A stretch of DNA of 63,792 nt, counting the filler, from Octopus bimaculoides (Eukaryota): the NCBI RefSeq assembly GCF_001194135.2. It is 7 parts of 6 records of this genome, joined end to end, with 100 filler letters (N's around TTAATTAATTAA, not from the genome) between each part and the next. Parts side by side here need not be neighbours in the genome. Positions count along the whole stretch, not along the records: positions 19,118 to 32,807 come from NC_069001.1; 6 more parts are not named here. One strand, 5' to 3'. Below, in pieces: positions 19,490 to 32,908 of the stretch. The position numbers and the translations under genes were made by a program. Under the pieces are notes generated by a model. It searched no databases, had not been told where the DNA came from, and worked only from the letters and a program-made list of their open reading frames with translations. Position 1 is the first letter of the stretch. Every line of letters starts with the position of its first letter.

Positions 19490-19645
19490 TGATATTGAGG
19501 GTCGCGGGTGGGTTGACGAGCTAAGCAAACACTACCAGTTCTTTGGGCTTTGCTACCACCGGAAGAAGCAGTTTATACAATACACACAGTACTACTAGCA
19601 ATTCCAGTTAGCTGCACTTCAGCAAACAGTCATACAAAGGTAGGT
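19490..19645 (+). promoter_or_regulatory. Candidate promoter / non-coding first exon of the BEN gene
   Basis: Non-repetitive, locally CpG-containing stretch with ETS-like CCGGAAG and a donor CAAAG|GTAGGT at 19639/19640, at the start of the same contig block as the gene. Inference only. Confidence 0.25.
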
Positions 19646-21185
19646 AGAACTTCATCTAAAAAAACACAGGGAAAATAACAATAATAATAAATGTCTAAGA
19701 CGGCCAAGATTTTGCTGTATGTATATATGTGTAAATATATACATGATATTCAATTTGATACCGCTGCTACTGCAGTTAGAGCAGAATTAAGACACCAACT
19801 ACAGCTTCTACGGCAACATAATGTATCTGTGTAGTCTTCTCTGCCCTCTTGTTTTAGCCTTCTTTAGCATTCCGTACATAGTTGCCTGGTTCAGCTTAGC
19901 ATTCGGAACGAGTAAAAATTCAGTCCATTTGAATACATTAGTCATTGTTCACGTTTATGTATTTATATATATATATATTTTTAAATATATATTAAATCAC
20001 GTATTTCAAGAAATTAATTACATGAATATTAAGTTGAAAGAATGAATGAAAGAAAAAAAGAGATTTAAAAACAAAAAAACGAAACACACGCAAATTACCG
20101 ATTGTCTAGGAATAAGACTAAATAAGATAGCCAGCTTTTAAACAACGATGCTTAACAATTGCCATTTTAATTTAGGTCAACTTGCAACATGGCTGAGTTT
20201 ATTAAAATAAAATTATATATATATATATATNNNNNNNNNNNNNNNNNNNNNNNNNNNNNNNNNNNNNNNNNNNNNNNNNNNNNNNNNNNNNNNNNNNNNN
20301 NNNNNNNNNNNNNNNNNNNNNNNNNNNNNNNNNNNNNNNNNNNNNNNNNNNNNNNNNNNNNNNNNNNNNNNNNNNNNNNNNNNNNNNNNNNNNNNNNNNN
20401 NNNNNNNNNNNNNNNNNNNNNNNNNNNNNNNNNNNNNNNNNNNNNNNNNNNNNNNNNNNNNNNNNNNNNNNNNNNNNNNNNNNNNNNNNNNNNNNNNNNN
20501 NNNNNNNNNNNNNNNNNNNNNNNNNNNNNNNNNNNNNNNNNNNNNNNNNNNNNNNNNNNNNNNNNNNNNNNNNNNNNNNNNNNNNNNNNNNNNNNNNNNN
20601 NNNNNNNNNNNNNNNNNNNNNNNNNNNNNNNNNNNNNNNNNNNNNNNNNNNNNNNNNNNNNNNNNNNNNNNNNNNNNNNNNNNNNNNNNNNNNNNNNNNN
20701 NNNNNNNNNNNNNNNNNNNNNNNNNNNNNNNNNNNNNNNNNNNNNNNNNNNNNNNNNNNNNNNNNNNNNNNNNNNNNNNNNNNNNNNNNNNNNNNNNNNN
20801 NNNNNNNNNNNNNNNNNNNNNNNNNNNNNNNNNNNNNNNNNNNNNNNNNNNNNNNNNNNNNNNNNNNNNNNNNNNNNNNNNNNNNNNNNNNNNNNNNNNN
20901 NNNNNNNNNNNNNNNNNNNNNNNNNNNNNNNNNNNNNNNNNNNNNNNNNNNNNNNNNNNNNNNNNNNNNNNNNNNNNNNNNNNNNNNNNNNNNNNNNNNN
21001 NNNNNNNNNNNNNNNNNNNNNNNNNNNNNNNNNNNNNNNNNNNNNNNNNNNNNNNNNNNNNNNNNNNNNNNNNNNNNNNNNNNNNNNNNNNNNNNNNNNN
21101 NNNNNNNNNNTATATATATATATATGTAAAAGGCAGTGGTCCCAGCATAACCCTCAGCTATGGCTTGAAGCTGAAAAATAAAATA

Positions 21186-21340
21186 AGGCATAGCTGTGTG
21201 GTAAGAAGCTTGCTTCCCAACCACATGGTTCCAGGTTCAGTCCCACTGCGTGGCATCTTGGGCAAAATATCTTCTATGACAGCCTTGGCTTGATCAAAGC
21301 CTCATGAGTCAATTTGATAGACAGAAACTGAAAGGAACCA
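21186..21340 (+). mobile_element. tRNA-headed SINE family A
   Basis: GCTGTGTGGTAAGAAGCTTGCTTCCCAACCACATGGTTCCAGGTTCAGTCCCACTGCGTGGCA. The same family recurs at 23870, 24588(-), 27508, 28155(-), 35840(-), 41150, 52030 and 56112(-). Confidence 0.85.
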
Positions 21341-21344
21341 GCTA

Positions 21345-21383
<39 letters not shown>

Positions 21384-21949
21384 GGTATTCTCTAACAAGG
21401 ATAGTATTAACAATGTCTGTCACATCAAAAGGCATGTTTTAAATATGGCTACATTAAAACAAAGCAAAAAAAAAGAATTAAAATGAAAATGGCTGGGAGG
21501 GTGTAACTGGTATGACTTGTCAGGATTATCATTCCATGGTTGTCACCAGTAGAACCATCACTGTTTTCAACTGGCTTAGTCACCTTCATCATCATTATGA
21601 TGTTTCCACTGTCGTTTGTATGACATCCTTTTTAACTTTGGTTGGTTCAATTCTGTTGTTATAGTTATGTAATTAAAACTGAGTGGGTTGGGAGAGTGCT
21701 TTACACCAGTCCTTAATATACTGATATAACAATATAGTAATAATAATAATAATAATAATAATCGTCGTCGTCGTTTAACGTCCGCTTTCCATGCTAGTAT
21801 AATAATAATAATAAAAGTAAACATAAGAGCACCACAGCAAACCACAGCACATACCCAAGGCGCACAGAGCTGCGCTCGGTAGTGAAGTGAAAGCACGTTA
21901 TAAAAATAAAACTACTGAACAATAATAATAATAATAATCATAATAATTG

Positions 21950-22399
21950 TAATTTTGGCACAAGGTCAGCCGTTTTATGGGACGAGGCAAAGTCGGTTAC
22001 ACCGACCCCCTGTGTTTGACTGATACTTTATTTTATCAATTCTGAAAAGATGGAAGACTAAGCTGACCTTGGTGGAATTTGAACTCAGTATGTCAAGAGA
22101 GGTGAAATGCCATTAAGCATTTTGTGCTTGTGTGCTAACGATTCTGCCAATCTTGCCACTTCAATAAAGACTTTGAATTTTTGGCACAAGGCCAGCAAGT
22201 TCAAGGAAGGGAGACGAGGCGGGTGTGGATGGGGGGGGGGTCAGTAAATTACATCGACTTCTCCAGTGTTTGACTGGTACTTCTTTTATTGACACCAGAA
22301 GGATGAAAGACAAAGTGGGATTTGAACCCAGAATGTAAAGACAGACAAAATGCTGGTAAGCACTTTGCCTGGCATGCTTTCAATTCTACCAGCTCACTG

Positions 22400-22438
<39 letters not shown>

Positions 22439-22659
22439 TAATAATGCTTTCTTATTATAGGCACAAAGCCTGAAATTTGGGGGAAGGGGATAGTGGATTA
22501 CATCGACCGCAGTACTAAACTGGTACTTGATTTATCGACCCCGAAAGGATGAAAGGCCAAGTTGACCTCGGTGGAATTTGAACTCAGAACATAAAGAAGG
22601 ACGAAATACTGCTAAGCATTTTGTCCGGCGTGCTAACAATTCAGCCAGCTCACAGCCTC

Positions 22660-22699
<40 letters not shown>

Positions 22700-22920
22700 C
22701 CTTTCTACTATAGGCACATGGCCTGAAATGTTTTAGGGGAGGGGACTAGTCGATTACATTGACCCCCAGTGTTTCTCTGGTACTTAATTTATCGACCCTG
22801 AAAGGACGAAAGGCAAAGTCAGCCTCTGTGGAACTTGAACTCGGAACGTAGCAACAGACGAAATACCACTAAGCATTTCGCTCAGCATACTAACAATTCT
22901 GCTAGCTCGCCGCCTCCATT
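21950..22920 (-). mobile_element. Four head-to-tail copies of SINE family B separated by (AAT)n tails
   Basis: Copies at about 21950-22161, 22175-22402, 22445-22661 and 22698-22920, each with GGAATTTGAAC(T/C)CAG and GCTAACA/GATTC; each is the reverse complement of the copy at 24890-25110. Confidence 0.85.
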
Positions 22921-23000
22921 AACAACAACAACAACAACAACAGTAATAATAATAACAACAACAATAATATTTTTTTTCTGTTATCTCTTTGAACAGGCAA

Positions 23001-23166
23001 ATGTCAGAACCTCCAGTAATGTACATAAAAACAGAAGATGATGATGATGATGATAATAAAGAGAATTTGAAGAAGAAAATAAAATACTTAGAAGAAGAGA
23101 ACGAAACCTTGAAGAAAGCTCTTGAACAGCTACAACAGCTGCAAGGCAAATGTTGTGACTGGTGTG
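23001..23166 (+). CDS. BEN-domain protein, coding exon 1 (MSEPPVMYIKTEDDDDDDNKENLKKKIKYLEEENETLKKALEQLQQLQGKCCDWC)
   Basis: Acceptor ctttgaacag|G at 22996/22997, ATG at 23001, donor G|gtaagc (phase 1); heptad coiled-coil pattern. Confidence 0.85.
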
Positions 23167-23290
23167 GTAAGCATGCTCTTTTATAATCTCAGGTCACGTT
23201 GTTGTTTTTAAAAAAAACTGCTAAGGTTTTACTCCTCCTCTCTAGATTTCTGTCTCAGCATTACACACGCATACCTATTTCCTAGCTGTC

Positions 23291-23816
23291 TATGAGGGGG
23301 TGCTGAAAGTTCTTGGCTTCGAGTAAAAGGAAATACAAGGGGATCAGTTAATTATGATTTTATTCAACATATTCCCCCTTTCAGATTCACACACTTATTG
23401 CAGCAGTCCTTCAGTTTTTCTAAACCCTGTAAAAGAACTTGGGATGTTGGGCCTCCAAACAGGCCTTTTGTGATACCCTGAAAGCCAGGAACTTACCAAT
23501 ACCCCCTCATATGTATGTGTGCATATGCCTGTGTGCGTATGTCTGTGTATATATATATATATACACACACACATACATACATACATACATACACACACGA
23601 GGGTGTGCCGTAAAGCTCCTGGCTTTGGGTAAAAGAAAATACAGGAGGATCAGTTAATTATGATTTTATCAAACATATTCCCCTCTCAGATTCTCACGCT
23701 TATTACAGTAGTCCTTCAGTTTTTCTAAGCCCTGTAAAAGAACTTGGAAGGTTGGGCCTCCAACCAGGCCTTTTGTGATACCCTTAAAGCCAGGAACATT
23801 TCAGCAACCCCTTGCA
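23291..23816. mobile_element. Two tandem mariner-type MITEs (23291-23511, 23596-23816)
   Basis: First copy runs TATGAGGGGGTGCTGAAAGTTCTTGGCTT ... AAAGCCAGGAACTTACCAATACCCCCTCATA, with TIRs and TA ends; the second copy aligns along its length. Confidence 0.85.
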
Positions 23817-24029
23817 CATGCTTATTTTCTGTCCGTCTGTCTGTCTATCTGTGCATCTTTACACTCATATTACTGCATGGCACTTTGGGCAAGTGTCTTC
23901 CGCTATGGCCTTGGGCTGACTGAAGCCTTGTGATTGAATTTGGTTGGCGGAAGTTTCTGTTGTGTGTGTGTACATGTGTGTGGAAGTGCTTGTGCCTCCT
24001 AAGAGGGAGGAGGAAAGAAACTACCTCAC

Positions 24030-24275
24030 TTGGGATGAGGTGGGGGTTGGCAACAGGAAGGGCATCCGGCTGTAGAAAGCTTACCACACAATATCATCAT
24101 CATTGTTTAATGTCTGCTTTCCATGCTGGCATGGGTTGGATGGTTTGACTGAAAACTGGTAAGCCAGGGGAAGTGGGGGTGCACCAGGCTCCAATCTGAT
24201 TTGTCAAGGTTTCTACAGCAGGATGCCCTTTTCTACACCAACCATTCCGAAAGTATAGTGGGTGCTTTTTACTTG
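24030..24275. mobile_element. Repeat family C fragments (AGGAAGGGCATCCAGCTGT...CCAACCCATGCCAGCATGGAAAG + (ATG)n tail)
   Basis: Same motifs recur at 27855-27965, 28828-28940, 29655-29865, 30090-30435 and 30790-30830(-). Confidence 0.75.
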
Positions 24276-24309
24276 GACTAGTCATTATTTTTTCCTATGT
24301 TTTTTGTAG

Positions 24310-24551
24310 AGTTGTTGATGCCAAATTCAGATCAAGAACGGACAGTGGTCAGCAATTGGCTGGAAAGTGTTTTAATAGCCATCAAAAGCCAACGAGAGAA
24401 CTCTGAAATTGTTGTTGAAGATACAACTAGCAGATATGTACCGTCCCTGCCAGCAGCACCCCCTCCAGTTGCTGCTCCGTCCCCTCCACCTCTTCCTCTA
24501 CCTCTTTCTCCTTCAAATCCAGGCATGAATCTACAGCCATTGTTAGTTGAG
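24310..24551 (+). CDS. BEN-domain protein, coding exon 2 (ELLMPNSDQ...Pro-rich...QPLLVE)
   Basis: Acceptor ttttttgtag|AG completes phase 1; donor GAG|gtaagt is phase 0; no stops. Confidence 0.88.
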
Positions 24552-24889
24552 GTAAGTTTTGGTACCTCATCATTTTTTTTTATCACATCAACACACCAAC
24601 ATCGGTTGTCAAGCGATGTTGGAGGGACAAACACAGACACACACATTTATATACATGATGGGCTTCTTTCAGTTTCCGTCTACCAAATCCATTCACAAGG
24701 TTTTGGTCGGCCCAAGCTATAGTAGAAGACACTTGCCCAAGGTGCCATGCCGTGGGACTGAACCCGGGACCATGTGGTTGGTAAGCAAGCTACTTACCAC
24801 ACAGCCACTGTATATATAATTAATCGAAGTGTATATTATATGTCTATTACGGCCGGTTGTACTCTTTGATGAATGCATCCACTCTACTA

Positions 24890-25110
24890 AGGCGACGAGC
24901 TGGCAGTATCGTTAGCAAGCCGGGCGAAATGCTTAGCGGCACTTCGCCTGTCTTTGCGTCGTTCTGAGTTCAAATTCCGCTGAGGTCGACTTTGCCTTTT
25001 ATTCTTTCGGGGGTCGATAAATTAAGTACCAGTTGTGTACTGGAGTCGATCTAATCGGCTGACCCCCCCCCCCACAAATTTCGGGCCTTGTGTCTAGAGT
25101 AGAAAGAATA
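24890..25110 (+). mobile_element. SINE family B, full length
   Basis: GGCGACGAGCTGGCAGTATCGTTAGC...GAGTTCAAATTCCGCTGAGGTCGAC...GGGCCTTGTGTCTAGAGTAGAAAG; Pol III B-box-like GAGTTCAAATTCC. Confidence 0.8.
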
Positions 25111-25681
25111 TACCCACTCCACTGACAGATATACGAGTGTATTTAATCCAGACTCATTGACTCCTAAACGGCTTACATATTTATATACATATATAAACAC
25201 ACACACGTACCTACGTACGTATGTGTGTGTTCATTACATAAAGATCTTTTTATCCACCACATTTTAATTAATTATCATGGTATGTCATATTTGGTGTTAT
25301 TTTCTCCTCTGCTAACTATTAAACCATTCATCAAGGAATAAATACGACCTCCATGTGGGTTCTTGTCATCCGGCTTAAAAATAAAATGCTTTGTCCAATG
25401 TTCGGCGTGCAATGCAAAGTCGCTAACAAAGAGACAAAGTGCTGATCAAGCTCGTATTTCTTGATTAGAACCTACTTCAAGGGAGATAACCTTTAGCATT
25501 AGTACATATTAACGTTTTATTTAGTTTAGCAGTCATAACGAGTTGTCGTCATATACATAACAATAATCTCCCGCCATATCGCGCTTTATTGTGTCAGCTT
25601 ACGTCCATTCCTCCGTGGTGTTGTTTTGCATTTATAATAAAATAAATATATACAAATTATAAACATTAAAAAAATTTATAC

Positions 25682-25758
25682 AGTACTGTTTTTGCGGATT
25701 TTCATCTATTGCGGTGGGTTTTCGAATGTAACACCCGCGATAGTCGAGGGATTACTCT
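25682..25758 (-). mobile_element. Tc1/pogo (Tigger-like) MITE end
   Basis: Minus strand AGTAATCCCTCGACTATCGCGGGTGTTAC resembles pogo/Tigger TIRs. Confidence 0.45.
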
Positions 25759-25764
25759 GTGTGT

Positions 25765-25818
<54 letters not shown>

Positions 25819-26332
25819 ACATAAATAATATATAATTATATGCATATATCCATACATATATGTACATACCGACATCTAGTTTTATTGTTGTTTCTTATTC
25901 TCTTTTTGGCGATCTTACGGTACGAGTCCTAAATATCGGCCTTTTCCGTCTCAAGTTTTTACTTCAAAAAAATTCCTTATGCGGCATGATGTTATTTAAA
26001 AGATTTTAACGTATGATAGGAAAAAAAATTTCTTTGAAAAATCAGTATAATTATAAATCTCGTCATTGTTTATCAAAGTTATCTCCCTTGTAACAATTTC
26101 TATTCGGATGAACTGAATGAGAATCGCCATTATGCGGTCGCTTGACTTGCTAGAAATAATAACTAAATTTCTTTAAAATCACCTACTATCGAAAAACAAA
26201 AGTGGTGGTGGGGGGCGCATTGGGTAATGTATTCCTAGATAGGGTATGGTGGGAAGTTTATTTGATCGATGCAATGACGGAAAAGAAGGCATTAAATGAT
26301 GACGACGACATTCCTTGTATTTTTATATCTAG

Positions 26333-26440
26333 GGAACAGCCATGACAAAATCCCTGCCAATAAATTACATGAAGTTAAAAGCAATTCTACGAGCAACAAA
26401 TGAACGACTCGGAGATAAAATGAAATATCTTTTAAACAAG
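26333..26440 (+). CDS. BEN-domain protein, coding exon 3 (GTAMTKSLPINYMKLKAILRATNERLGDKMKYLLNK)
   Basis: Acceptor tttttatatctag|GGA, donor AAG|gtcagt; 108 nt, phase 0-0. Confidence 0.85.
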
Positions 26441-26829
26441 GTCAGTCAGTTGTTACATTTTTTTTTCATTTTATCTAGTTTCAGCTCATAAGCTGTGGCC
26501 ATGCTGGGGCACGTCTAAAATTGTTTTATTTGTTGTTTGTTTTTTTAATGGTTTGTTTCTGAAGAAGGAAAGGTTGATGTGGTCTGGAAGAGGGTGTTCT
26601 TTGAACGTCTGCCATAGAAAACTGCTGATAAAAACCATGGGCACTGATCGAATTACAAAGAGAAAATTATGCACCAAACACCAGCTTAAAGTTATTTTAA
26701 TGGAATCTTTGTTATTTTCAAAATAAATTTCGAACAAAAGCAGTGTATTTCAGCAGAAATATGGTGACATATTAGAATAATAATAATAATAATAACTTTG
26801 AATATAAATGCAGGCATGGATGAGTGGCT

Positions 26830-27006
26830 AAGATGTTTGGTACCAGGTTGATCCCAAAATCTAATAAGTCTGTGCCAGTTACGAGGCCAAACATCCCTGA
26901 AAGTTTCATCCAAATCTATCCAGCGGTTCTTGAGATATCTTGTCCACGGACAAACAAACAAACACAACTGAAAACAATACCTCTGCCTTCGCTAAGGCAG
27001 AGATAA
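26830..27006 (+). mobile_element. Non-autonomous Helentron/Helitron-like element 3' part
   Basis: Short (ACAA)n tract followed by the perfect hairpin CTCTGCCTT-CGCT-AAGGCAGAG (26981-27002) and ATAAT, the usual HINE/DINE 3' architecture. Confidence 0.55.
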
Positions 27007-27224
27007 TAGGAAAGAGCTGAAATGAATGCATGCAAGATTTCACAGCTCTAGCATTACTCCTTCATAGTCAGCCTTTGAACTTTTCAGCCCACCCTTCCTT
27101 GTATGAAGGGGGTGAGATGTATGGGGTGGGGGTCAGAGAGATAAATTGGAGGCACAGGTGTAAAACGGTGTAAAATATCAGTGTGTTGCTCTAGTAAAGT
27201 TTTTCTTTTTTTTTACCGTTGCAG

Positions 27225-27342
27225 TTGGTTGATGCTATGTTCACACGCGATGAGCTGGTGGCAGCTAGTGGCCTAGGGCTACGAACACAGAAAGACAAAC
27301 AACACACACCACTTGATAGGAAGAAATTAACTGCCATAAAAG
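27225..27342 (+). CDS. BEN-domain protein, coding exon 4 (LVDAMFTRDELVAASGLGLRTQKDKQHTPLDRKKLTAIK)
   Basis: Acceptor ttttaccgttgcag|TTG, donor G|gtaatt (phase 1); BEN signature L-x3-F-x3-L-x3-S-x2-G...LD-x2-K-x2-AIK. Confidence 0.9.
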
Positions 27343-28489
27343 GTAATTATTATAAATCTGCTTTTCATAAATATTTTTCTTTTGAAACAAAGACATCACC
27401 TGGTTTAATATTTCGATCCAGAGAGGACAAATGAGATTGATGTGGTTCATGTCCTGCATGGTGATGATGATCCTCATCACCAGATTCTGACATTGATGTG
27501 GTTGATAGGCACAGACATGGCTGGGTGGTTCAGAAGCTTGCTTCACAACCATGTAGTCTCAGGTTCAGTCCCACTGTGCAGCACCTTAGGCAAGGGACTT
27601 CTACTCTGATTCCTGCTTCAATAAATTCTGTCTGATCGATACATGCAAGCATGGAAAAGGTGGATGCTAAACATCATTCAGTCACACTCACAGACTGTAG
27701 TGACACTGGACAATGTCAGGCCACACTCCCAGACTGTGAGGGTATTGATATGGTTGATGTCCAGTCTAAATAACTTCAGGCCACACTTCCAAAACTGCGG
27801 AGACATCTACATGTTTGATATTCAATATGGACAACACTGTACCCAAATCAAACCATTCCAAAACTGACCTCGCCTGTGCTGGTGCCATGTAAAAAGCACT
27901 CAGTCCACTCTGCAGGGTGGTTGGTGTTAGGAAGGGCATCCAGCTGTAAAAAGACGTGCCAAAAACATGGTAACAAAAGGGTTAGGTCTTGGTACAAAAG
28001 TTTTCCCTTCATAGTTTTTAACTTTGCCCTGTACATAAATCACCTCACCACCAATTAAAGTTAAGCGTAAAACAATGTGACTTATATACAAGTAAATACG
28101 GTATCTTTATCCTTTATTTTTTGCCTTATGAATCAACCTCAGGACTTTTTTTTTTAAAGCCTGGTACTTATTCTATTGGTTTCTTAGCTGAACCACTAAG
28201 TTATAGGGACATAAACAAACCGACACAAGTTATCAAGCAGTGGTGGGGGACAAACACGCACGCACACACACGAGTTTCTTTCAGTTTCTGTTTACCAAAT
28301 TCACTCACAAGGCTAGAGTAGGAGACACTTGCCCAAGATGTCACACAGTGGGACTGAACCCAGAACCATGTGGTTAGGAAGCAAACTTCTTACCACACAG
28401 CCACATCTGTGCCTATAAGTATATTTTATATGTTTTACCAACTAACATAAATTACAGATTTTTAAAAAAAAATTTTCTTTTCCTTACAG

Positions 28490-28641
28490 AGTTCCTGGCA
28501 GAGTTTTCTGAGAGAAAGAATATTAAGATGATGGATTCACGGACGTTTCGGGTAACAGTGGGGAATAAAATCACAAATGCACGCAGGAACTTACGGAACG
28601 AATTTAAGATTGATCAAATTGCTGCAAACATAAGCTCATGA
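28490..28641 (+). CDS. BEN-domain protein, last coding exon (EFLAEFSERKNIKMMDSRTFRVTVGNKITNARRNLRNEFKIDQIAANISS*)
   Basis: Acceptor ttttccttacag|AG completes phase 1, TGA at 28639-28641; the basic K-x2-N-ARR helix is typical of the BEN DNA-recognition helix. Confidence 0.88.
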
Positions 28642-28678: not shown

Positions 28679-28684
28679 AATAAA
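28679..28684 (+). terminator. Polyadenylation signal AATAAA
   Basis: 37 nt after the stop codon, followed by a T/G-rich tract. Confidence 0.5.
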
Positions 28685-29494
28685 TATTCTTTGCCTTGCT
28701 TTTGTGCCAAAATTAACCGATCCAAAGAAAACGGTAATTTTTTTCATTGGGAACAAACAATACAAAACAATTGTTACCGTTTCTTTGGCACTTAAAAAAA
28801 AAAAAAACCCAGTTGTTTTATTGTATCCAGCTGTAGAAACTCTGCCAAATCAGACTGGAGCCTGGTGTCGCCTCCTGGTCCACCAGTCCTCAGTCAAATC
28901 GTCCAACCCATGCTAGCATGGAAAGCGGATGTTAAACGACTATATTCCAAATCTGAATCTTAATTTGGAAACTAAAATCAATAGCAGCAGCAATATGGCA
29001 ATGATGAGTTGACAAGAATCGGTAGAGCATCGGACAAAATGCTTTGTGGTGTATTAGTTTGGTGCTTCTCTTACTGAGTTCAAATCCTGCTGTGGTCAGC
29101 TGTGCTTTACATCCTTCCAGGGGACCAATAAAATTGAATGCTGGTCACGTATTAGGGGTTGATATGATTGACTGCAACCCCTTGTCAAAGTTTATGTCCT
29201 TATTGCTGAAATTCTCGTTTGTTTCAATCATTGGACTGCAGCCATGCTGGAGCACTGCTCTGAAGAGCTTAGTCCAGTGGTTCCCAAACATTTTGGGGCT
29301 GCTACCCCCTTGGCTATTGGGCCACATTCCTAGCCCCGCCACCTCCCACTCACCACCACACACATACACCACTTTCTGCAACAAACTCTAAACCAACTGT
29401 ATTTCACAAATAAAACTAATTAACCCATTATTTTGTCGTTTTTACATCCATCGCCCTCTTTCGACCACCCCATCCTCACCCCCACTGGATCTGA

Positions 29495-29649: not shown

Positions 29650-30848
29650 AAACCATTCCAAAACTGAACTTGCCTGGTCTGGTGCCATGTAAAAAGTACT
29701 CGGTCCACTCTGTGGGGTGGTTGGTGTTAAGAAGGGCATCCAGTCATAAAAACCATACCAAAACAGACACTGAAGCCTGGTGCAGTCTTCTGCCTAACCA
29801 GTTCCTGTCAAACCGCCCAACCCATGACAGCATGGAAAGTGGATGTATGATGATGATGATGATGGGAAAATGAAATGTAAATTCCTCAGTGGAATTTGAA
29901 CACTCAGCAAACACATAATAAATCCAGTACTTCACCTTATTGTTAAGCAGTAGCCCTAAATTCTTTTATCAGTTCTAGGAAGACAAATGACTCCAGGATT
30001 ATGTAATATTATAAAGTACTTTTGACTTAATCTTTAAGGTGTACCAGGTGACATGACATTATTTAGTAAGCTTTATTGCAGTTGGGTCATGGGTGGATAC
30101 TCACATGTATACCTGTATGCGTGTGTCACCATCTGAATGTGGTTGATGCCAGTGTCCCTTGACTGGTTCCCGTACGAGTAGCACATAAAAAGCCCCATAA
30201 AAAAGTGGTTGATGCCAGTGTGCCGCCTGACTGGCTCCCATGCTGGTGGCACATAAAAAGCACCCATTACACTCTCAGAGTGGTTGGCGTTAGGAAGAGC
30301 ATCCAGCTGTAGAAACCTTGCCAGAACAGAGTGGAGCCTGGTGCAGCCTCCTGGCTTGCCAGTCCTCAGTCAAACTGTCCAACCCATGCCAGCATGGAAA
30401 ATGGACGTTAAACGACGACAACAACGACGATGATGACATATATGTTTATGTGTGTGTCTGTGTGAGTCTGTATTAGTATGAAGAGAAGTACTGCCAAATA
30501 ACAAGGGCAAAATTAAGCCATTTAATCTAGCTGACTCTGTAAGTACTTGATCTCTGAATGACATAAATTCCATGATATGAAATGAAACGGAAAGTAATTG
30601 CCAGTGAATAAATCACAGAATAGGTACGTTCCTCTTCCCCCAAAACAACAACAACAACAGTGGCATCAACAACAAAGATAACAAGATATGTCACTGCTAT
30701 TTTCACTAGGGGGGTTTCTATGAAAAAAAGGTGATATACTTTCAACTGTGTTGCTAAATACATATTGAAGGATATATCGTTCGTTCATCATTGTTTAACG
30801 TTCACTTTCCATGGTAGCATGGGTTGGACAATTTGCATACATACATAA

Positions 30849-30911
<63 letters not shown>

Positions 30912-31008
30912 CACATATATACATACATATATATGCATATATACATACACATATATACATACACACACACACAATATATATACACATACATATGTACATA
31001 TTTCTATG

Positions 31009-31044
<36 letters not shown>

Positions 31045-31494
31045 TACATATATGTATGTATGTGTATATATATATATATTCTTTGTGACAAACTGTCTTG
31101 ACAACTGTCATATTAGGTTGCTAACGAGCGTTTAAGTAGCCTCTTCATAGTTTAGTTACTCCCAGAGATTTATTATCAGTAATACTAAGTGTACTTGTTT
31201 GACCAATAATCTTTAATTGTACATTCATTTTCTTCCCTGAGTAGGGCAGTGTGTACGTGTGTCCACGCACATGTGTCTATGTGTTGTTTTATCCATGTAC
31301 AGAGTAGCCTGTTCTGTTCATATAACAATGCACAGAGACAAACTAAGTTCGAACAAGGTATAAACCCTTTACCTGTCCTGTGTATCATGCGATAAACAAA
31401 AATCTATTTCCCTGGTATCTATACATCATATATGGATTCATGGTTATACTTTAGCATATGGCCTGCCTGGCCATTTACCCTTTAGTGTGCAGTC

Positions 31495-31544: not shown

Positions 31545-31653
31545 CATGCATATGTGCTTATACATATAAATATATATATATATATTATGTGTGTGTGTGT
31601 GCATATATATGAGCATATAAATATATATATATATACATAATTGCCATTTTGTT

Positions 31654-31801
31654 GGTACTGCATCTGGGCACTGAGAGCCACTGCCTGGTACTGCATCAGG
31701 GCACAAAAAGCCACTGCGTGGTACTGCACCCTGGCACTGAGAACCACTGTCTGGTACTGCATCAGTGTACTGAGAGCCACTGCCTGGTACTGCATCAGGG
31801 C

Positions 31802-31802
<1 letters not shown>
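31654..31802. repeat. 33-bp minisatellite, about 4.5 copies
   Basis: Unit GGTACTGCATC(A/T)GGGCACTGAGAGCCACTGCCT repeated head to tail with no spacers. Confidence 0.9.
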
Positions 31803-31858
<56 letters not shown>

Positions 31859-32908
31859 TATTATTATTATTATTATAATATATTATATTTTCTTTTCTGA
31901 TTAATATTACCAGAAGCAACTTCAAAGAAAAGCTGTCACCTCTCATCTATGTCATTTAATATAACGTTAATTGATAAGGTTGAATCAAAAGAACATGTTA
32001 TATAATTTTACCACCACCCTGGAGTACTTATTCTTTGATGAAAGAAAATAATATTGTAAGGTCTTAAAGACAGAACCCACCCTCTCCTACTTTTCAATAA
32101 AAAAACATTGTTTTATTCAAATGAACAAAGGAATGGTTAGCACAATGATACCATTTTCAGTACCTGTACACGGCGACGGATATACGTGTCGGGGGTAGAG
32201 TGGTGGTATTCAATTAATACCCTCCAGGGAAGACAAGAAACGTAATTTCAATGGCAAAATATTCTAGAAATTCTCTAGAAGGAATTTGTACTCGGTAAAT
32301 TCAGGAACAACTGAATGAATATACAAACATTGACACCATCCTCATTAACACCCATTTTTTTCCCCCATGCAGGTATAAACTGAAAGGGTCTACCTCATCA
32401 GAGCATCCCACTGTTTGTTGTGGTCCCTTCTCGTCACCTCAAGGTTCATAACCCTCAAATTAATCTACCCCACATCTTCCCATGTCGTCTTTTCTCCCCC
32501 CCCCTCAGGATCCTTCCACCCAGTTTATTTTGACCCTTTTCTCTCCCAACCCAGCCTATCATCTTTCTCGTACCTGCATATATTACCTGCCCATACCATT
32601 CACGGATTCCTCTCTTCGGCGCTATGACTCATACCTGTAATACCCATTTCTCCTTTCCCCCCCCACCTGCTTTTCGTTGTTGCTCTGCGCTGACATGACC
32701 CAACACACAGGCTCAACTCTCATTAATTTCCAGTCTTCACACATCCACCCCAATCAACACCCGTGTTTTATTAACGTAGCACTTTGCACATAATTACTAT
32801 ATAATTCNNNNNNNNNNNNNNNNNNNNNNNNNNNNNNNNNNNNNNNNNNNNTTAATTAATTAANNNNNNNNNNNNNNNNNNNNNNNNNNNNNNNNNNNNN
32901 NNNNNNNG

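What the first reader, a model, noticed from the sequence alone, without database searches (positions are those of the whole stretch)
23001..28641. Complete spliced BEN-solo protein gene invisible in the ORF track
Five exons (23001-23166, 24310-24551, 26333-26440, 27225-27342, 28490-28641) have canonical GT-AG sites with matching phases (1,0,0,1). They join into a stop-free protein of about 261 aa, followed by AATAAA. Architecture: acidic N-terminus, coiled coil, Pro-rich linker and one C-terminal BEN domain. Established: BEN-solo proteins (Drosophila Insensitive/Elba/Bsg25A, vertebrate BEND5/6/7) are sequence-specific repressors or insulator factors, several with neural roles. From memory the C-terminus most resembles BEND7 (KLV..F...L..S..G.R...LD....AIK.F......ARR.L). 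Orthology is not established; it may be a lineage-specific cephalopod regulator.
Basis: partly seen in the sequence, partly recalled or inferred. Interest (0 to 1): 0.8.

Follow-up and report, generated by a model that had tools for sequence, protein, structure and literature searches.

The report
Annotated octopus BEN-domain transcription factor gene
The five exons are real and encode a 261-residue octopus protein with a leucine zipper and one BEN DNA-binding domain. The gene is already annotated (LOC106872038), and its BEN domain most resembles that of human NACC1, with no support for the proposed link to BEND7.

Summary
The five GT-AG exons join into a 786-nt, 261-aa ORF that is 100% identical over its full length to the NCBI protein LOC106872038 of Octopus bimaculoides (UniRef: "BEN domain-containing protein"). 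The annotated gene range equals 23001-28641.

- **Conservation:** Argonauta has the same five exons and phases. The exons are the only collinear conserved DNA between the two species, and dN/dS is about 0.07. In another, unidentified ortholog-bearing species, transcript contigs and genomic fragments show splicing at three of the four junctions.
- **BEN domain:** Pfam BEN passes its cut-off narrowly (24.4 against 23.2 bits). The predicted fold matches solved BEN domains, best NACC1 (TM 0.68).
- **Relatives:** BEND7 is not supported. No hit whose source name was looked up is called BEND7. The closest vertebrate relatives found are unnamed LOC proteins (sturgeon, lungfish, salamanders, turtle, platypus, opossum). 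Other relatives occur in echinoderms, hemichordates and bivalves. A clam and a sturgeon relative share a phase-1 intron inside the BEN domain.
- **Likely mechanism:** a leucine-zipper dimer that reads DNA with helix α5 (T240, R243, R244) and loop residue R192.
- **Extra exon:** a non-coding upstream exon ending at 19639 is inferred.

This is an ordinary, already annotated but functionally unstudied gene.

The parts
19608..19639 (+). 3' end of a candidate non-coding first exon (5'UTR). The donor G|GTAGGT begins at 19640. The exon's start is unknown.
   Evidence: The O. vulgaris ortholog P0002 has a 16-residue N-terminal extension (MAALHFSKQSFIQRQ-M). Seven consecutive residues of it (LHFSKQS) are encoded here. 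Joining 19639 to the acceptor before 22997 reads ...IQRQ-MSEPP in frame, as in O. vulgaris. In O. bimaculoides TTA replaces the ATG and a stop lies upstream, so the exon is untranslated. This is inferred; there is no transcript evidence for this species and no conserved block in Argonauta.
22997..23166 (+). Exon 1: 4 nt of 5'UTR after the acceptor ...ttgaacag|GCAA, then CDS 23001-23166 (aa 1-55 plus 1 nt, phase 1).
   Evidence: in-frame TAA at 22965 upstream of the ATG. Conserved with Argonauta at 23043-23182.
23025..23036 (+). I9-K10-T11-E12, a psi-K-x-E motif followed by an acidic run; a candidate SUMO acceptor site.
   Evidence: I9, K10, E12 and D14 are invariant in all five orthologs. The functional reading is inference from the known consensus.
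23058..23144 (+). Leucine-zipper-like coiled coil (aa 20-48). Heptad d positions are L23, L30, L37, L44; a positions are I27, N34, L41.
   Evidence: Heptad scan. AlphaFold helix 16-57 with pLDDT about 85. These residues are invariant or conservative in the orthologs. Weak sub-threshold bZIP/TSC22 Pfam hits.
23151..23165 (+). C51-C52-D53-W54-C55 motif at the end of the coiled coil, just before intron 1.
   Evidence: GKCCDWCE.LMP is invariant in all five orthologs. Its function is unexplained.
24310..24551 (+). Exon 2 (aa 56-136, ends in phase 0): an amphipathic helix (aa 63-86) and a Pro-rich disordered linker.
   Evidence: pLDDT below 50 for residues 86-139; 29% Pro in residues 91-139. Its 5' part is conserved with Argonauta at 24298-24391.
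26333..26440 (+). Exon 3 (aa 137-172): start of the BEN domain, with helix α1 and part of α2.
   Evidence: (block 26327-26442). The same exon boundaries appear in another species' genomic fragments P0008 and P0017 when compared with its transcript-encoded protein P0004.
27225..27342 (+). Exon 4 (aa 173-211 plus 1 nt, phase 1): BEN α2-α3, the α3-α4 loop with G188-L-G-L-R192, and the start of α4.
   Evidence: block 27210-27344; fragment P0007 is identical to P0004 residues 191-229, which align to octopus 173-211. The phase-1 intron after AIK is shared with clam and sturgeon relatives.
28490..28641 (+). Exon 5 CDS (aa 212-261 plus TGA): the rest of BEN α4 and the recognition helix α5.
   Evidence: (block 28484-28606).
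28537..28605 (+). The part of BEN helix α5 up to the end of the BEN region (aa 228-250; the predicted helix runs on to about aa 255-260), with N237, T240, N241, A242, R243, R244 (motif NKITNARR).
   Evidence: These residues align with NACC1 D462, T465, N466, A467, R468, R469. The roles of those NACC1 residues come from PMC11472053. Conservation across the family was measured.
28679..28684 (+). First AATAAA after the stop codon; a candidate polyadenylation signal.
   Evidence: Its use is not shown, and further AATAAA sites lie at 29127, 29409 and beyond.

Best explanation
Window 23001-28641 (+) holds the coding part of the annotated Octopus bimaculoides gene LOC106872038. It is a conserved cephalopod nuclear factor of the BEN-solo class.

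**Shown**
- The five coding exons are real.
- They are under strong purifying selection.
- They encode one C-terminal BEN domain. That domain has the five-helix BEN fold and is closest, among solved structures, to the NACC1 BEN domain.

**Inferred**
- The protein dimerises through a four-heptad leucine zipper (L23/L30/L37/L44, with N34 at an a position).
- Each BEN domain binds DNA in the 'type I' manner. Helix α5 enters the major groove: T240 and R244 read bases, R243 holds the backbone, and N237 replaces NACC1 D462. R192 of the α3-α4 loop reaches into the minor groove.
- A dimer would therefore prefer a palindromic or paired site. That site would be related to, but probably not identical with, the NACC1 ACATGT site.
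- By analogy with Insensitive, BEND5/6 and NACC1/2, it most likely acts as a sequence-specific repressor or boundary factor. The invariant IKxE-acidic motif at residues 9-18 may regulate it through SUMO.
- A non-coding exon about 3.4 kb upstream (ending at 19639) probably starts the transcript.
For: - **Gene model:** (100% identity and coverage to the RefSeq protein, same gene range).
- **Conservation:** Argonauta has the same five exons and phases. Exons are the only collinear conserved blocks. pN 0.157 against pS 0.727 gives dN/dS of about 0.07, and pN is 0.08 in the BEN region.
- **Splicing in orthologs:** uninterrupted orthologous ORFs sit in 1.0-1.4 kb contigs from five sequencing runs. 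That species' genomic fragments lose identity to its transcript protein exactly at the boundaries of exons 3 and 4.
- **BEN domain by sequence:** Pfam PF10523 24.4 bits against a cut-off of 23.2. NACC1 BEN scores E 5e-5 with the single sequence, 3e-6 with the cephalopod profile and 3e-12 with the family profile. BLASTP gives 30% identity, E 3e-11.
- **BEN domain by fold:** the domain model has pLDDT 82.9 and pTM 0.71. Its top 15 PDB matches are all BEN domains, best 8yzs_A with TM 0.68/0.63 and rmsd 3.3 A.
- **DNA contacts:** the NACC1 contact residues come from PMC11472053. R243 is R in 25 of 28 family members, R244 in 19, N241 in 22, A242 in 22, and R192 is R or K in 22. The BEN region has net charge +13.
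- **Zipper:**
- **Ancient family:**. hhalign against the vertebrate LOC family gives 99% probability, E 3e-18. Intron positions are shared with Mercenaria (two) and sturgeon (one).
Against: - There is no expression or splice-read evidence for O. bimaculoides itself, and no Logan transcript contig carries the exact protein.
- The Pfam score is only 1.2 bits above its threshold.
- Some NACC1 contact residues are not conserved: D462 is N237, R429 is H199, S423 is Q194 and R400 is N171.
- Some BEN domains (for example BEND3 BD1) do not bind DNA specifically (PMC8887127).
- Dimerisation, SUMO modification, repression and the target motif are all inferred.
- The coiled-coil regions of distant relatives do not align significantly.
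Confidence: 0.75

Rival explanations
1. The BEN domain of this protein is a protein-interaction module ('type 0' BEN, like BEND3 BD1) and not a sequence-specific DNA binder. The protein would be a chromatin adaptor recruited by partners.
For: Zheng et al. propose that some BEN domains are protein-protein platforms (PMC8887127). Several NACC1 phosphate contacts are not conserved here (R400, S423, R429).
Against: The α5 motif TNARR is identical to NACC1 T465-R469, including R469, whose mutation abolishes NACC1 binding. R192 matches the minor-groove R421. The domain has net charge +13. These positions are conserved across the family.
Confidence: 0.15
2. It is the cephalopod ortholog of vertebrate BEND7.
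For: That motif is generic for type I BEN domains. Zheng et al. note that the predicted BEND7, BEND4, BANP and NACC BEN structures look alike.
Against: None of the 31 hits at E <= 0.001 whose source names were looked up is called BEND7. Unnamed vertebrate LOC proteins score 47-59 bits with the same cephalopod profile, which gives NACC1 30 bits. Two family members were auto-named BEND4 or BEND4-like by their sources, and none BEND7. A BEND7 sequence could not be fetched, so no direct comparison was made.
Confidence: 0.05
3. It is a pseudogene, an over-predicted gene model, or a transposon- or virus-derived BEN ORF and not a host gene.
For: The locus is crowded with SINE-like repeats and microsatellites. 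BEN domains also occur in viruses (PMC8887127). No O. bimaculoides transcript contig was found.
Against: The ORF is intact. dN/dS is about 0.07. Exon-only conservation and identical intron phases hold in Argonauta. Spliced orthologous transcripts exist. Intron positions are shared with a bivalve and a fish. No further copy of the coding exons lies within the piece; the repeats found are SINE-like elements and microsatellites.
Confidence: 0.03

Closest known systems
NACC1 / NACC2 (BEND8/9) BEN domain, human; structures 8yzs and 7bv9
   Same: This is the only solved BEN domain found by sequence (E 3e-12 with the family profile; 30% identity) and the best structural match (TM 0.68). It shares the five-helix fold, the α5 motif TNARR, the GxGxR loop with the minor-groove arginine, and PLD at the start of α4.
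   Different: NACC proteins carry an N-terminal BTB/POZ domain. The octopus protein has none and has a leucine zipper instead. D462, R429, S423 and R400 are replaced (N237, H199, Q194, N171), so the ACATGT specificity may not be kept.
Unnamed vertebrate LOC family, e.g. platypus LOC103170203, opossum LOC103095644, sturgeon LOC117400729, lungfish LOC122804404, plus axolotl, Pleurodeles and turtle proteins
   Same: These are the closest vertebrate relatives by profile search (47-59 bits; hhalign 99%, E 3e-18). The order of parts is the same: coiled coil, helix, linker, C-terminal BEN ending in NARRD. The sturgeon gene has five coding exons. It shares the phase-1 intron in α4 and has a phase-1 intron directly after the coiled coil.
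   Different: They are 320-450 aa long with an extra N-terminal region of about 200 aa that octopus lacks. Only the BEN region aligns significantly. Pfam does not detect a BEN domain in four of them at E 0.01. Some axolotl relatives in the broader hit list carry a KRAB box. All are uncharacterised.
Drosophila Insensitive / Elba / Bsg25A and vertebrate BEND5 / BEND6 (BEN-solo factors)
   Same: They share the class-level architecture: one BEN domain, no other catalytic or DNA-binding domain, and a coiled coil in BEND5/6. The fold also matches (Bsg25A TM 0.61/0.69, Insv 0.50, BEND6 0.45). This is the functional analogy for sequence-specific repression or insulation.
   Different: There is no detectable sequence similarity to Insv, Bsg25A or BEND6 even with the family profile at E <= 10. 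These are not orthologs.
BEND4
   Same: Two members of the same BEN sub-group were named BEND4 or BEND4-like by their sources: oyster K1QNY3, which is 45% identical to octopus over the BEN core, and Anneissia XP_033114389.
   Different: These are automatic names. No vertebrate BEND4 appeared among the looked-up profile hits, and no BEND4 sequence was available for a direct test.

Membership tests
BEN domain (Pfam PF10523) | Score at or above the Pfam gathering threshold | tested here: met
   24.4 bits against a cut-off of 23.2, E 3.5e-5, residues 170-220. The margin is small. Orthologs P0002, P0004 and P0005 carry precomputed PF10523 hits.
BEN domain (Pfam PF10523) | Five-helix BEN fold with a long C-terminal α5 | tested here: met
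   The AlphaFold domain model has pLDDT 82.9 and five helices. The top 15 Foldseek PDB hits are all BEN domains, with NACC1 at TM 0.68/0.63 and probability 1.00.
BEN domain (Pfam PF10523) | Sequence-specific DNA binding through α5 and the α3-α4 loop (type I) | not testable with these tools
   Contact residues T240, R243, R244 and R192 are conserved relative to NACC1, but binding needs an experiment.
BEN-solo class | [quoted passage not shown] | tested here: met
   Only BEN passes its threshold in Pfam. All other hits (bZIP, TSC22, INO80E and others) are far below their cut-offs and lie on the coiled coil.
BEND7 orthologs | BEND7 is the nearest vertebrate relative (reciprocal best hit or phylogenetic grouping) | tested here: not met
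   An exhaustive profile search lists unnamed vertebrate LOC proteins at 47-59 bits, and no looked-up hit at E <= 0.001 is named BEND7. No direct alignment with BEND7 was possible.
NACC (BTB-BEN) family | N-terminal BTB/POZ domain | tested here: not met
   No BTB hit at E <= 10. The N-terminus is an acidic tail followed by a leucine zipper.
NACC (BTB-BEN) family | NACC-type BEN domain (α5 TNARR, loop GxGIR) | tested here: met
Insensitive / BEND5 / BEND6 group | Detectable sequence homology of the BEN domain | tested here: not met
   No hit to Insv, Bsg25A or BEND6 chains with profiles A1 or A2 at E <= 10. Similarity is at the fold level only. BEND5 is not in the PDB and was not tested.
bZIP transcription factors | A basic DNA-binding region directly N-terminal to the leucine zipper | tested here: not met
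   The region before the zipper is acidic (net -7 in residues 1-19). bZIP_1 and bZIP_2 score 9.9 and 11.3 bits against cut-offs of 27.6 and 22.3.

The most novel reading that the evidence does not exclude
The octopus gene may be the cephalopod representative of an unnamed, ancient BEN-solo lineage with a coiled coil and a NACC-type BEN domain ending in NARR. Such a lineage would be distinct from all nine named human BEN genes. It would survive in molluscs, echinoderms, hemichordates and a scattered set of vertebrates (sturgeon, lungfish, salamanders, turtle, platypus, opossum), and no eutherian or teleost member was seen among the hits. A shared phase-1 intron in helix α4 would mark the lineage. 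Cephalopods would have added an invariant CCDWC motif and a SUMO-type IKxE-acidic motif.
Probability: 0.4. Interest if true: 0.35.

Novelty: already known. Interest (0 to 1): 0.2.

Why it matters
The gene itself, however, is already in RefSeq and UniRef as a BEN domain protein. Its modest value lies elsewhere. No member of its sub-group, in any animal, has been studied. Its nearest vertebrate relatives are unnamed genes not seen among the hits from the usual model mammals. The conserved NACC1-like contact residues also make its DNA specificity directly testable. For cephalopod biology it is one more candidate sequence-specific regulator. There is no evidence here for a neural role.

Tried and rejected
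1. A weak tblastn match of the BEN region upstream (window 19794-19985, E 0.06-1.4). On inspection it is a hydrophobic, low-complexity frame with no BEN motifs, so it is chance.
2. The search for homologous proteins with the 28-sequence BEN alignment and with the BEN domain alone at E <= 10 returned almost nothing (4 and 1 proteins). These searches could not supply named BEND4 or BEND7 sequences.
3. The O. vulgaris protein could not be traced to a contig, so the upstream exon rests on protein-to-DNA matching only.
4. hhalign of the cephalopod family against the vertebrate family aligned only the BEN region. Homology of the coiled-coil parts is therefore not established.
5. Rfam and tRNA scans of the piece found nothing. 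Apart from the two ORFs that carry exons 2 and 4, the mechanical ORFs of 70 aa or more look by eye like repeat-derived or low-complexity translations, or run across the assembly gap.
6. Literature searches for LOC106872038, for BEN domain with octopus, and for the SRA run numbers gave nothing. The taxa behind the Logan transcripts remain unidentified.
7. The full-length AlphaFold model is poor outside the helices (pLDDT 66.9). Its Foldseek E-values are weak, so the domain-only model was used instead.

Full report
**Observation.** Their lengths (166, 242, 108, 118, 152 nt) give phases 1,0,0,1. Joined, they make a 786-nt ORF from ATG 23001 to TGA 28639-28641, encoding 261 residues with no internal stop. 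The first in-frame stop upstream of the ATG is TAA at 22965, and AATAAA lies at 28679.

**Identity.** The protein is 100% identical over its whole length to the NCBI protein 'uncharacterized protein LOC106872038 [Octopus bimaculoides]', which UniRef calls 'BEN domain-containing protein'. The gene on record lies on chromosome record CM046621.1 of assembly GCA_001194135.2. It spans exactly the 5641 nt that correspond to window 23001-28641. The window piece matches that record at all 13,690 compared positions. The gene model is therefore right, and it is already annotated. No paper in the searchable library mentions the locus, or BEN domains in octopus.

**Is it a real, functional gene?** Four lines of evidence say yes.
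- Orthologs exist in O. vulgaris (98% identity), Argonauta hians (63%) and two further taxa known only from assembled sequencing runs (59% and 56%).
- The Argonauta protein maps to its genome as five exons (184, 323, 111, 118, 167 nt) with the same phases 1,0,0,1.
- In a blastn comparison of the 25.6-kb octopus locus with the 27.6-kb Argonauta locus, the only collinear conserved blocks are the five exons (window 23043-23182, 24298-24391, 26327-26442, 27210-27344, 28484-28606). Every other match is a dispersed repeat.
- Non-synonymous divergence between octopus and Argonauta is 0.157 against a saturated synonymous 0.727, so dN/dS is about 0.07. It is 0.08 against 0.66 in the BEN region, and the Pro-rich linker evolves fastest.

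**Evidence for splicing.** I could not examine O. bimaculoides reads. The orthologs P0004 and P0005 are encoded as uninterrupted ORFs in contigs of 1.0-1.4 kb from five sequencing runs, which means processed transcripts. Short genomic fragments from the same kind of source (P0007, P0008, P0017) are identical to P0004 only within stretches that align to octopus G137-K172 and L173-K211. Beyond these they run into unrelated sequence. These stretches are exactly exons 3 and 4. Junctions 2, 3 and 4 are therefore used in an ortholog. All four junctions fall in gap-free, invariant parts of the ortholog alignment.

**A probable extra exon.** Exon 1 begins at an acceptor (ttgaacag|GCAAATG) four bases before the ATG. 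The O. vulgaris protein is 16 residues longer at the N-terminus (MAALHFSKQSFIQRQ-M). Seven consecutive residues of that extension (LHFSKQS) are encoded at window 19612-19632 (L001 6612-6632), followed by a good donor G|GTAGGT at 19639/19640. Joining 19639 to 22997 gives ...IQRQ-MSEPP in frame, as in O. vulgaris. In O. bimaculoides, however, TTA stands where O. vulgaris has ATG, and a stop lies just upstream. The stretch is therefore most likely a non-coding first exon, and the 261-residue product stands. This is inferred. There is an 880-N assembly gap (20231-21110) in the putative intron, and no conserved block in Argonauta.

**Architecture.**
- Residues 1-19 are acidic (net -7).
- Residues 20-57 form a long helix (pLDDT about 85).
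- Residues 63-86 form a second helix.
- Residues 86-139 are disordered, and residues 91-139 are 29% proline.
- Residues 140-261 are basic (net +13).
- The first helix has a clean heptad pattern, with L23, L30, L37, L44 at d positions and I27, N34, L41 at a positions. These residues are invariant or conservative in all orthologs. An Asn at a core a position is typical of parallel dimeric zippers (established knowledge from GCN4-type zippers), so I infer a homodimer.
- It is not a bZIP, because the preceding segment is acidic and the bZIP models score far below threshold.
- Two further invariant features are I9-K10-x-E12 followed by an acidic run (a SUMO-consensus-like motif, inference) and GKCCDWCE.LMP at residues 49-60. 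The role of the second is unexplained.

**BEN domain.**
- Pfam BEN scores 24.4 bits against a cut-off of 23.2 (E 3.5e-5, residues 170-220), which is a pass by a small margin.
- Independent support is stronger. The PDB sequence search finds the NACC1 BEN domain with the single sequence (E 5e-5), with the cephalopod profile (3e-6) and with a 28-member family profile (3e-12, 49.8 bits). BLASTP gives 30% identity over 86 residues.
- A domain-only AlphaFold model built on the family alignment has pLDDT 82.9 and pTM 0.71, with five helices. Its 15 best Foldseek matches in the PDB are all BEN domains: NACC1 (TM 0.68/0.63, rmsd 3.3 A), Bsg25A, BANP, Insensitive and BEND6.

**How it probably binds DNA.** In the NACC1-DNA crystal structure, helix α5 enters the major groove. 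D462, T465 and R469 read bases, and R468 holds the phosphate backbone together with R429 and S423 of the α3-α4 loop; cancer-associated mutations at R400 and R401 are also expected to weaken DNA binding. R421 of the α3-α4 loop enters the minor groove. R469A abolishes binding, and R468A and R429A nearly do (PMC11472053). Using the HMMER and BLASTP alignments, the octopus equivalents are:

| NACC1 | Role in NACC1 | Octopus |
|---|---|---|
| D462 | base contact | N237 |
| T465 | base contact | T240 |
| R469 | base contact | R244 |
| R468 | phosphate contact | R243 |
| R429 | phosphate contact | H199 |
| S423 | phosphate contact | Q194 |
| R400 | DNA-binding residue (contact type not stated) | N171 |
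| R401 | DNA-binding residue (contact type not stated) | K172 |
| R421 | minor groove | R192 |

The α5 motif TNARR is identical in the two proteins. Across 28 family members R243 is R in 25, R244 in 19, N241 and A242 in 22 each, R192 is R or K in 22, and N237 is N in 14. This fits the 'type I' BEN mode defined by Zheng et al. (PMC8887127). The Asp-to-Asn change at the base-reading position suggests a motif related to, but not identical with, ACATGT. A zipper dimer would favour a palindromic or paired site. Repressor or boundary activity is an analogy with Insensitive, BEND5/6 and NACC1/2 and is not shown here.

**Relatives and the BEND7 suggestion.** An exhaustive HMMER search with the cephalopod profile against 1.84 billion cluster representatives gave only 40 proteins at E <= 0.001. 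I looked up source names for 31 of them.
- Nearly all are 'uncharacterized' or 'hypothetical' proteins. They come from the brittle star Amphiura (best hit, 2e-23), the urchin Diadema, the sea cucumber Apostichopus, the crinoid Anneissia, the hemichordates Ptychodera and Saccoglossus, the bivalves Mercenaria and Magallana, the gastropod Gigantopelta and, at the borderline, the anemone Actinostola.
- Among vertebrates they come from sturgeon and paddlefish, lungfish, axolotl, Pleurodeles, green turtle, platypus and opossum.
- None is called BEND5, BEND6, BEND7 or NACC. Two are auto-named BEND4 or BEND4-like.
- The nine hits not looked up are the cephalopod ortholog itself and eight short fragments, four of which match the cephalopod ortholog.
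- With the same profile NACC1 scores 30 bits, below the roughly 35 bits needed for listing. BEND7 therefore also scores below the listed proteins, which include vertebrate LOC proteins at 47-59 bits.
- hhalign of the cephalopod family against seven of those vertebrate proteins gives 99% probability (E 3e-18) over octopus residues 145-250.
- Oyster K1QNY3 is 45% identical over the BEN core.
- I could not fetch BEND4 or BEND7 sequences, so no direct alignment was made. BEND7 orthology is judged not supported, which is weaker than disproved.

**Gene structure supports deep ancestry.** The Mercenaria relative (five coding exons) has a phase-0 intron at the position of octopus junction 2 (DE|NV against VE|GT). 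It also has a phase-1 intron at junction 4 (ACK|EYV against AIK|EFL). The sturgeon relative (five coding exons) has the same phase-1 intron at junction 4 (ACE|AFL) and a phase-1 intron directly after its coiled coil, as octopus does. Junction 3 is not shared: it is shifted by 10 nt in the clam and absent in the sturgeon. Many relatives show the same order of parts (coiled coil, amphipathic helix, variable linker, C-terminal BEN), but only the BEN part aligns significantly.

**Surroundings.** No other gene is called within 10 kb on either side. Apart from the two ORFs that carry exons 2 and 4, the mechanical ORFs look by eye like repeat or low-complexity translations, or run across the assembly gap. 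There is no Rfam or tRNA hit. The introns and flanks are full of SINE-like copies and microsatellites.

**Verdict.** The finding is real, and its main interpretation is correct: it is a spliced BEN-solo gene. It is an already annotated gene of a known kind. The BEND7 link is not supported. The nearest characterised relative is the BEN domain of NACC1/2, and the nearest vertebrate relatives found are unnamed, unstudied genes. Interest is low. A modest residual point is that this BEN sub-group has never been studied in any animal.

Noticed in passing
window 22315-22955: About 2.5 tandem copies of a 257-nt SINE-like unit, each ending in an (AAT)n or (AAC)n tail. They run right up to the polypyrimidine tract and acceptor of exon 1. 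A third, more diverged partial copy lies at 22032-22125.
   Followed up: partly
window 24716-24808, 28312-28404, 21204-21265, 27532-27593: Four copies of a second short repeat, present as two direct-repeat pairs (86% and 82% identical) that read as reverse complements of each other. It contains a tRNA B-box-like GGGACTGAACCC, but ARAGORN finds no tRNA and Rfam finds nothing. Other dispersed repeats match many non-collinear places in the Argonauta locus.
   Followed up: partly
window 20231-21110: An 880-N assembly gap inside the piece. It lies in the putative first intron, between the candidate non-coding exon and exon 1.
   Followed up: no
window 31653-31886: A 33-nt minisatellite (4.5 copies, about 80% matches) directly followed by (TTA)27.
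   Followed up: no
window 30837-31079: A long AT/TA/CA-type microsatellite (about 240 nt) that also scores as a set of imperfect inverted repeats. Similar TA and TG runs lie at 21316-21402, 23499-23597 and 25735-25884.
   Followed up: no
window 23151-23165 (aa 51-55): A CCDWC cysteine cluster at the C-terminal end of the leucine zipper is invariant in all five orthologs but absent from non-cephalopod relatives. Two such clusters would face each other in a dimer, which could allow metal binding or a disulfide. This was not tested.
   Followed up: partly
proteins P0013, P0014 (Ambystoma mexicanum): Some axolotl members of the same BEN sub-group carry an N-terminal KRAB box (Pfam E 3e-11). This KRAB-BEN fusion would link the BEN type directly to a repressor module.
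   Followed up: no
proteins P0012, P0018, P0021, P0022 (platypus, sturgeon, lungfish, Pleurodeles): Pfam finds no BEN domain at E <= 0.01 in these vertebrate relatives, although the cephalopod profile matches them at 1e-7 to 1e-11. This sub-group sits at the edge of the current Pfam BEN model.
   Followed up: partly
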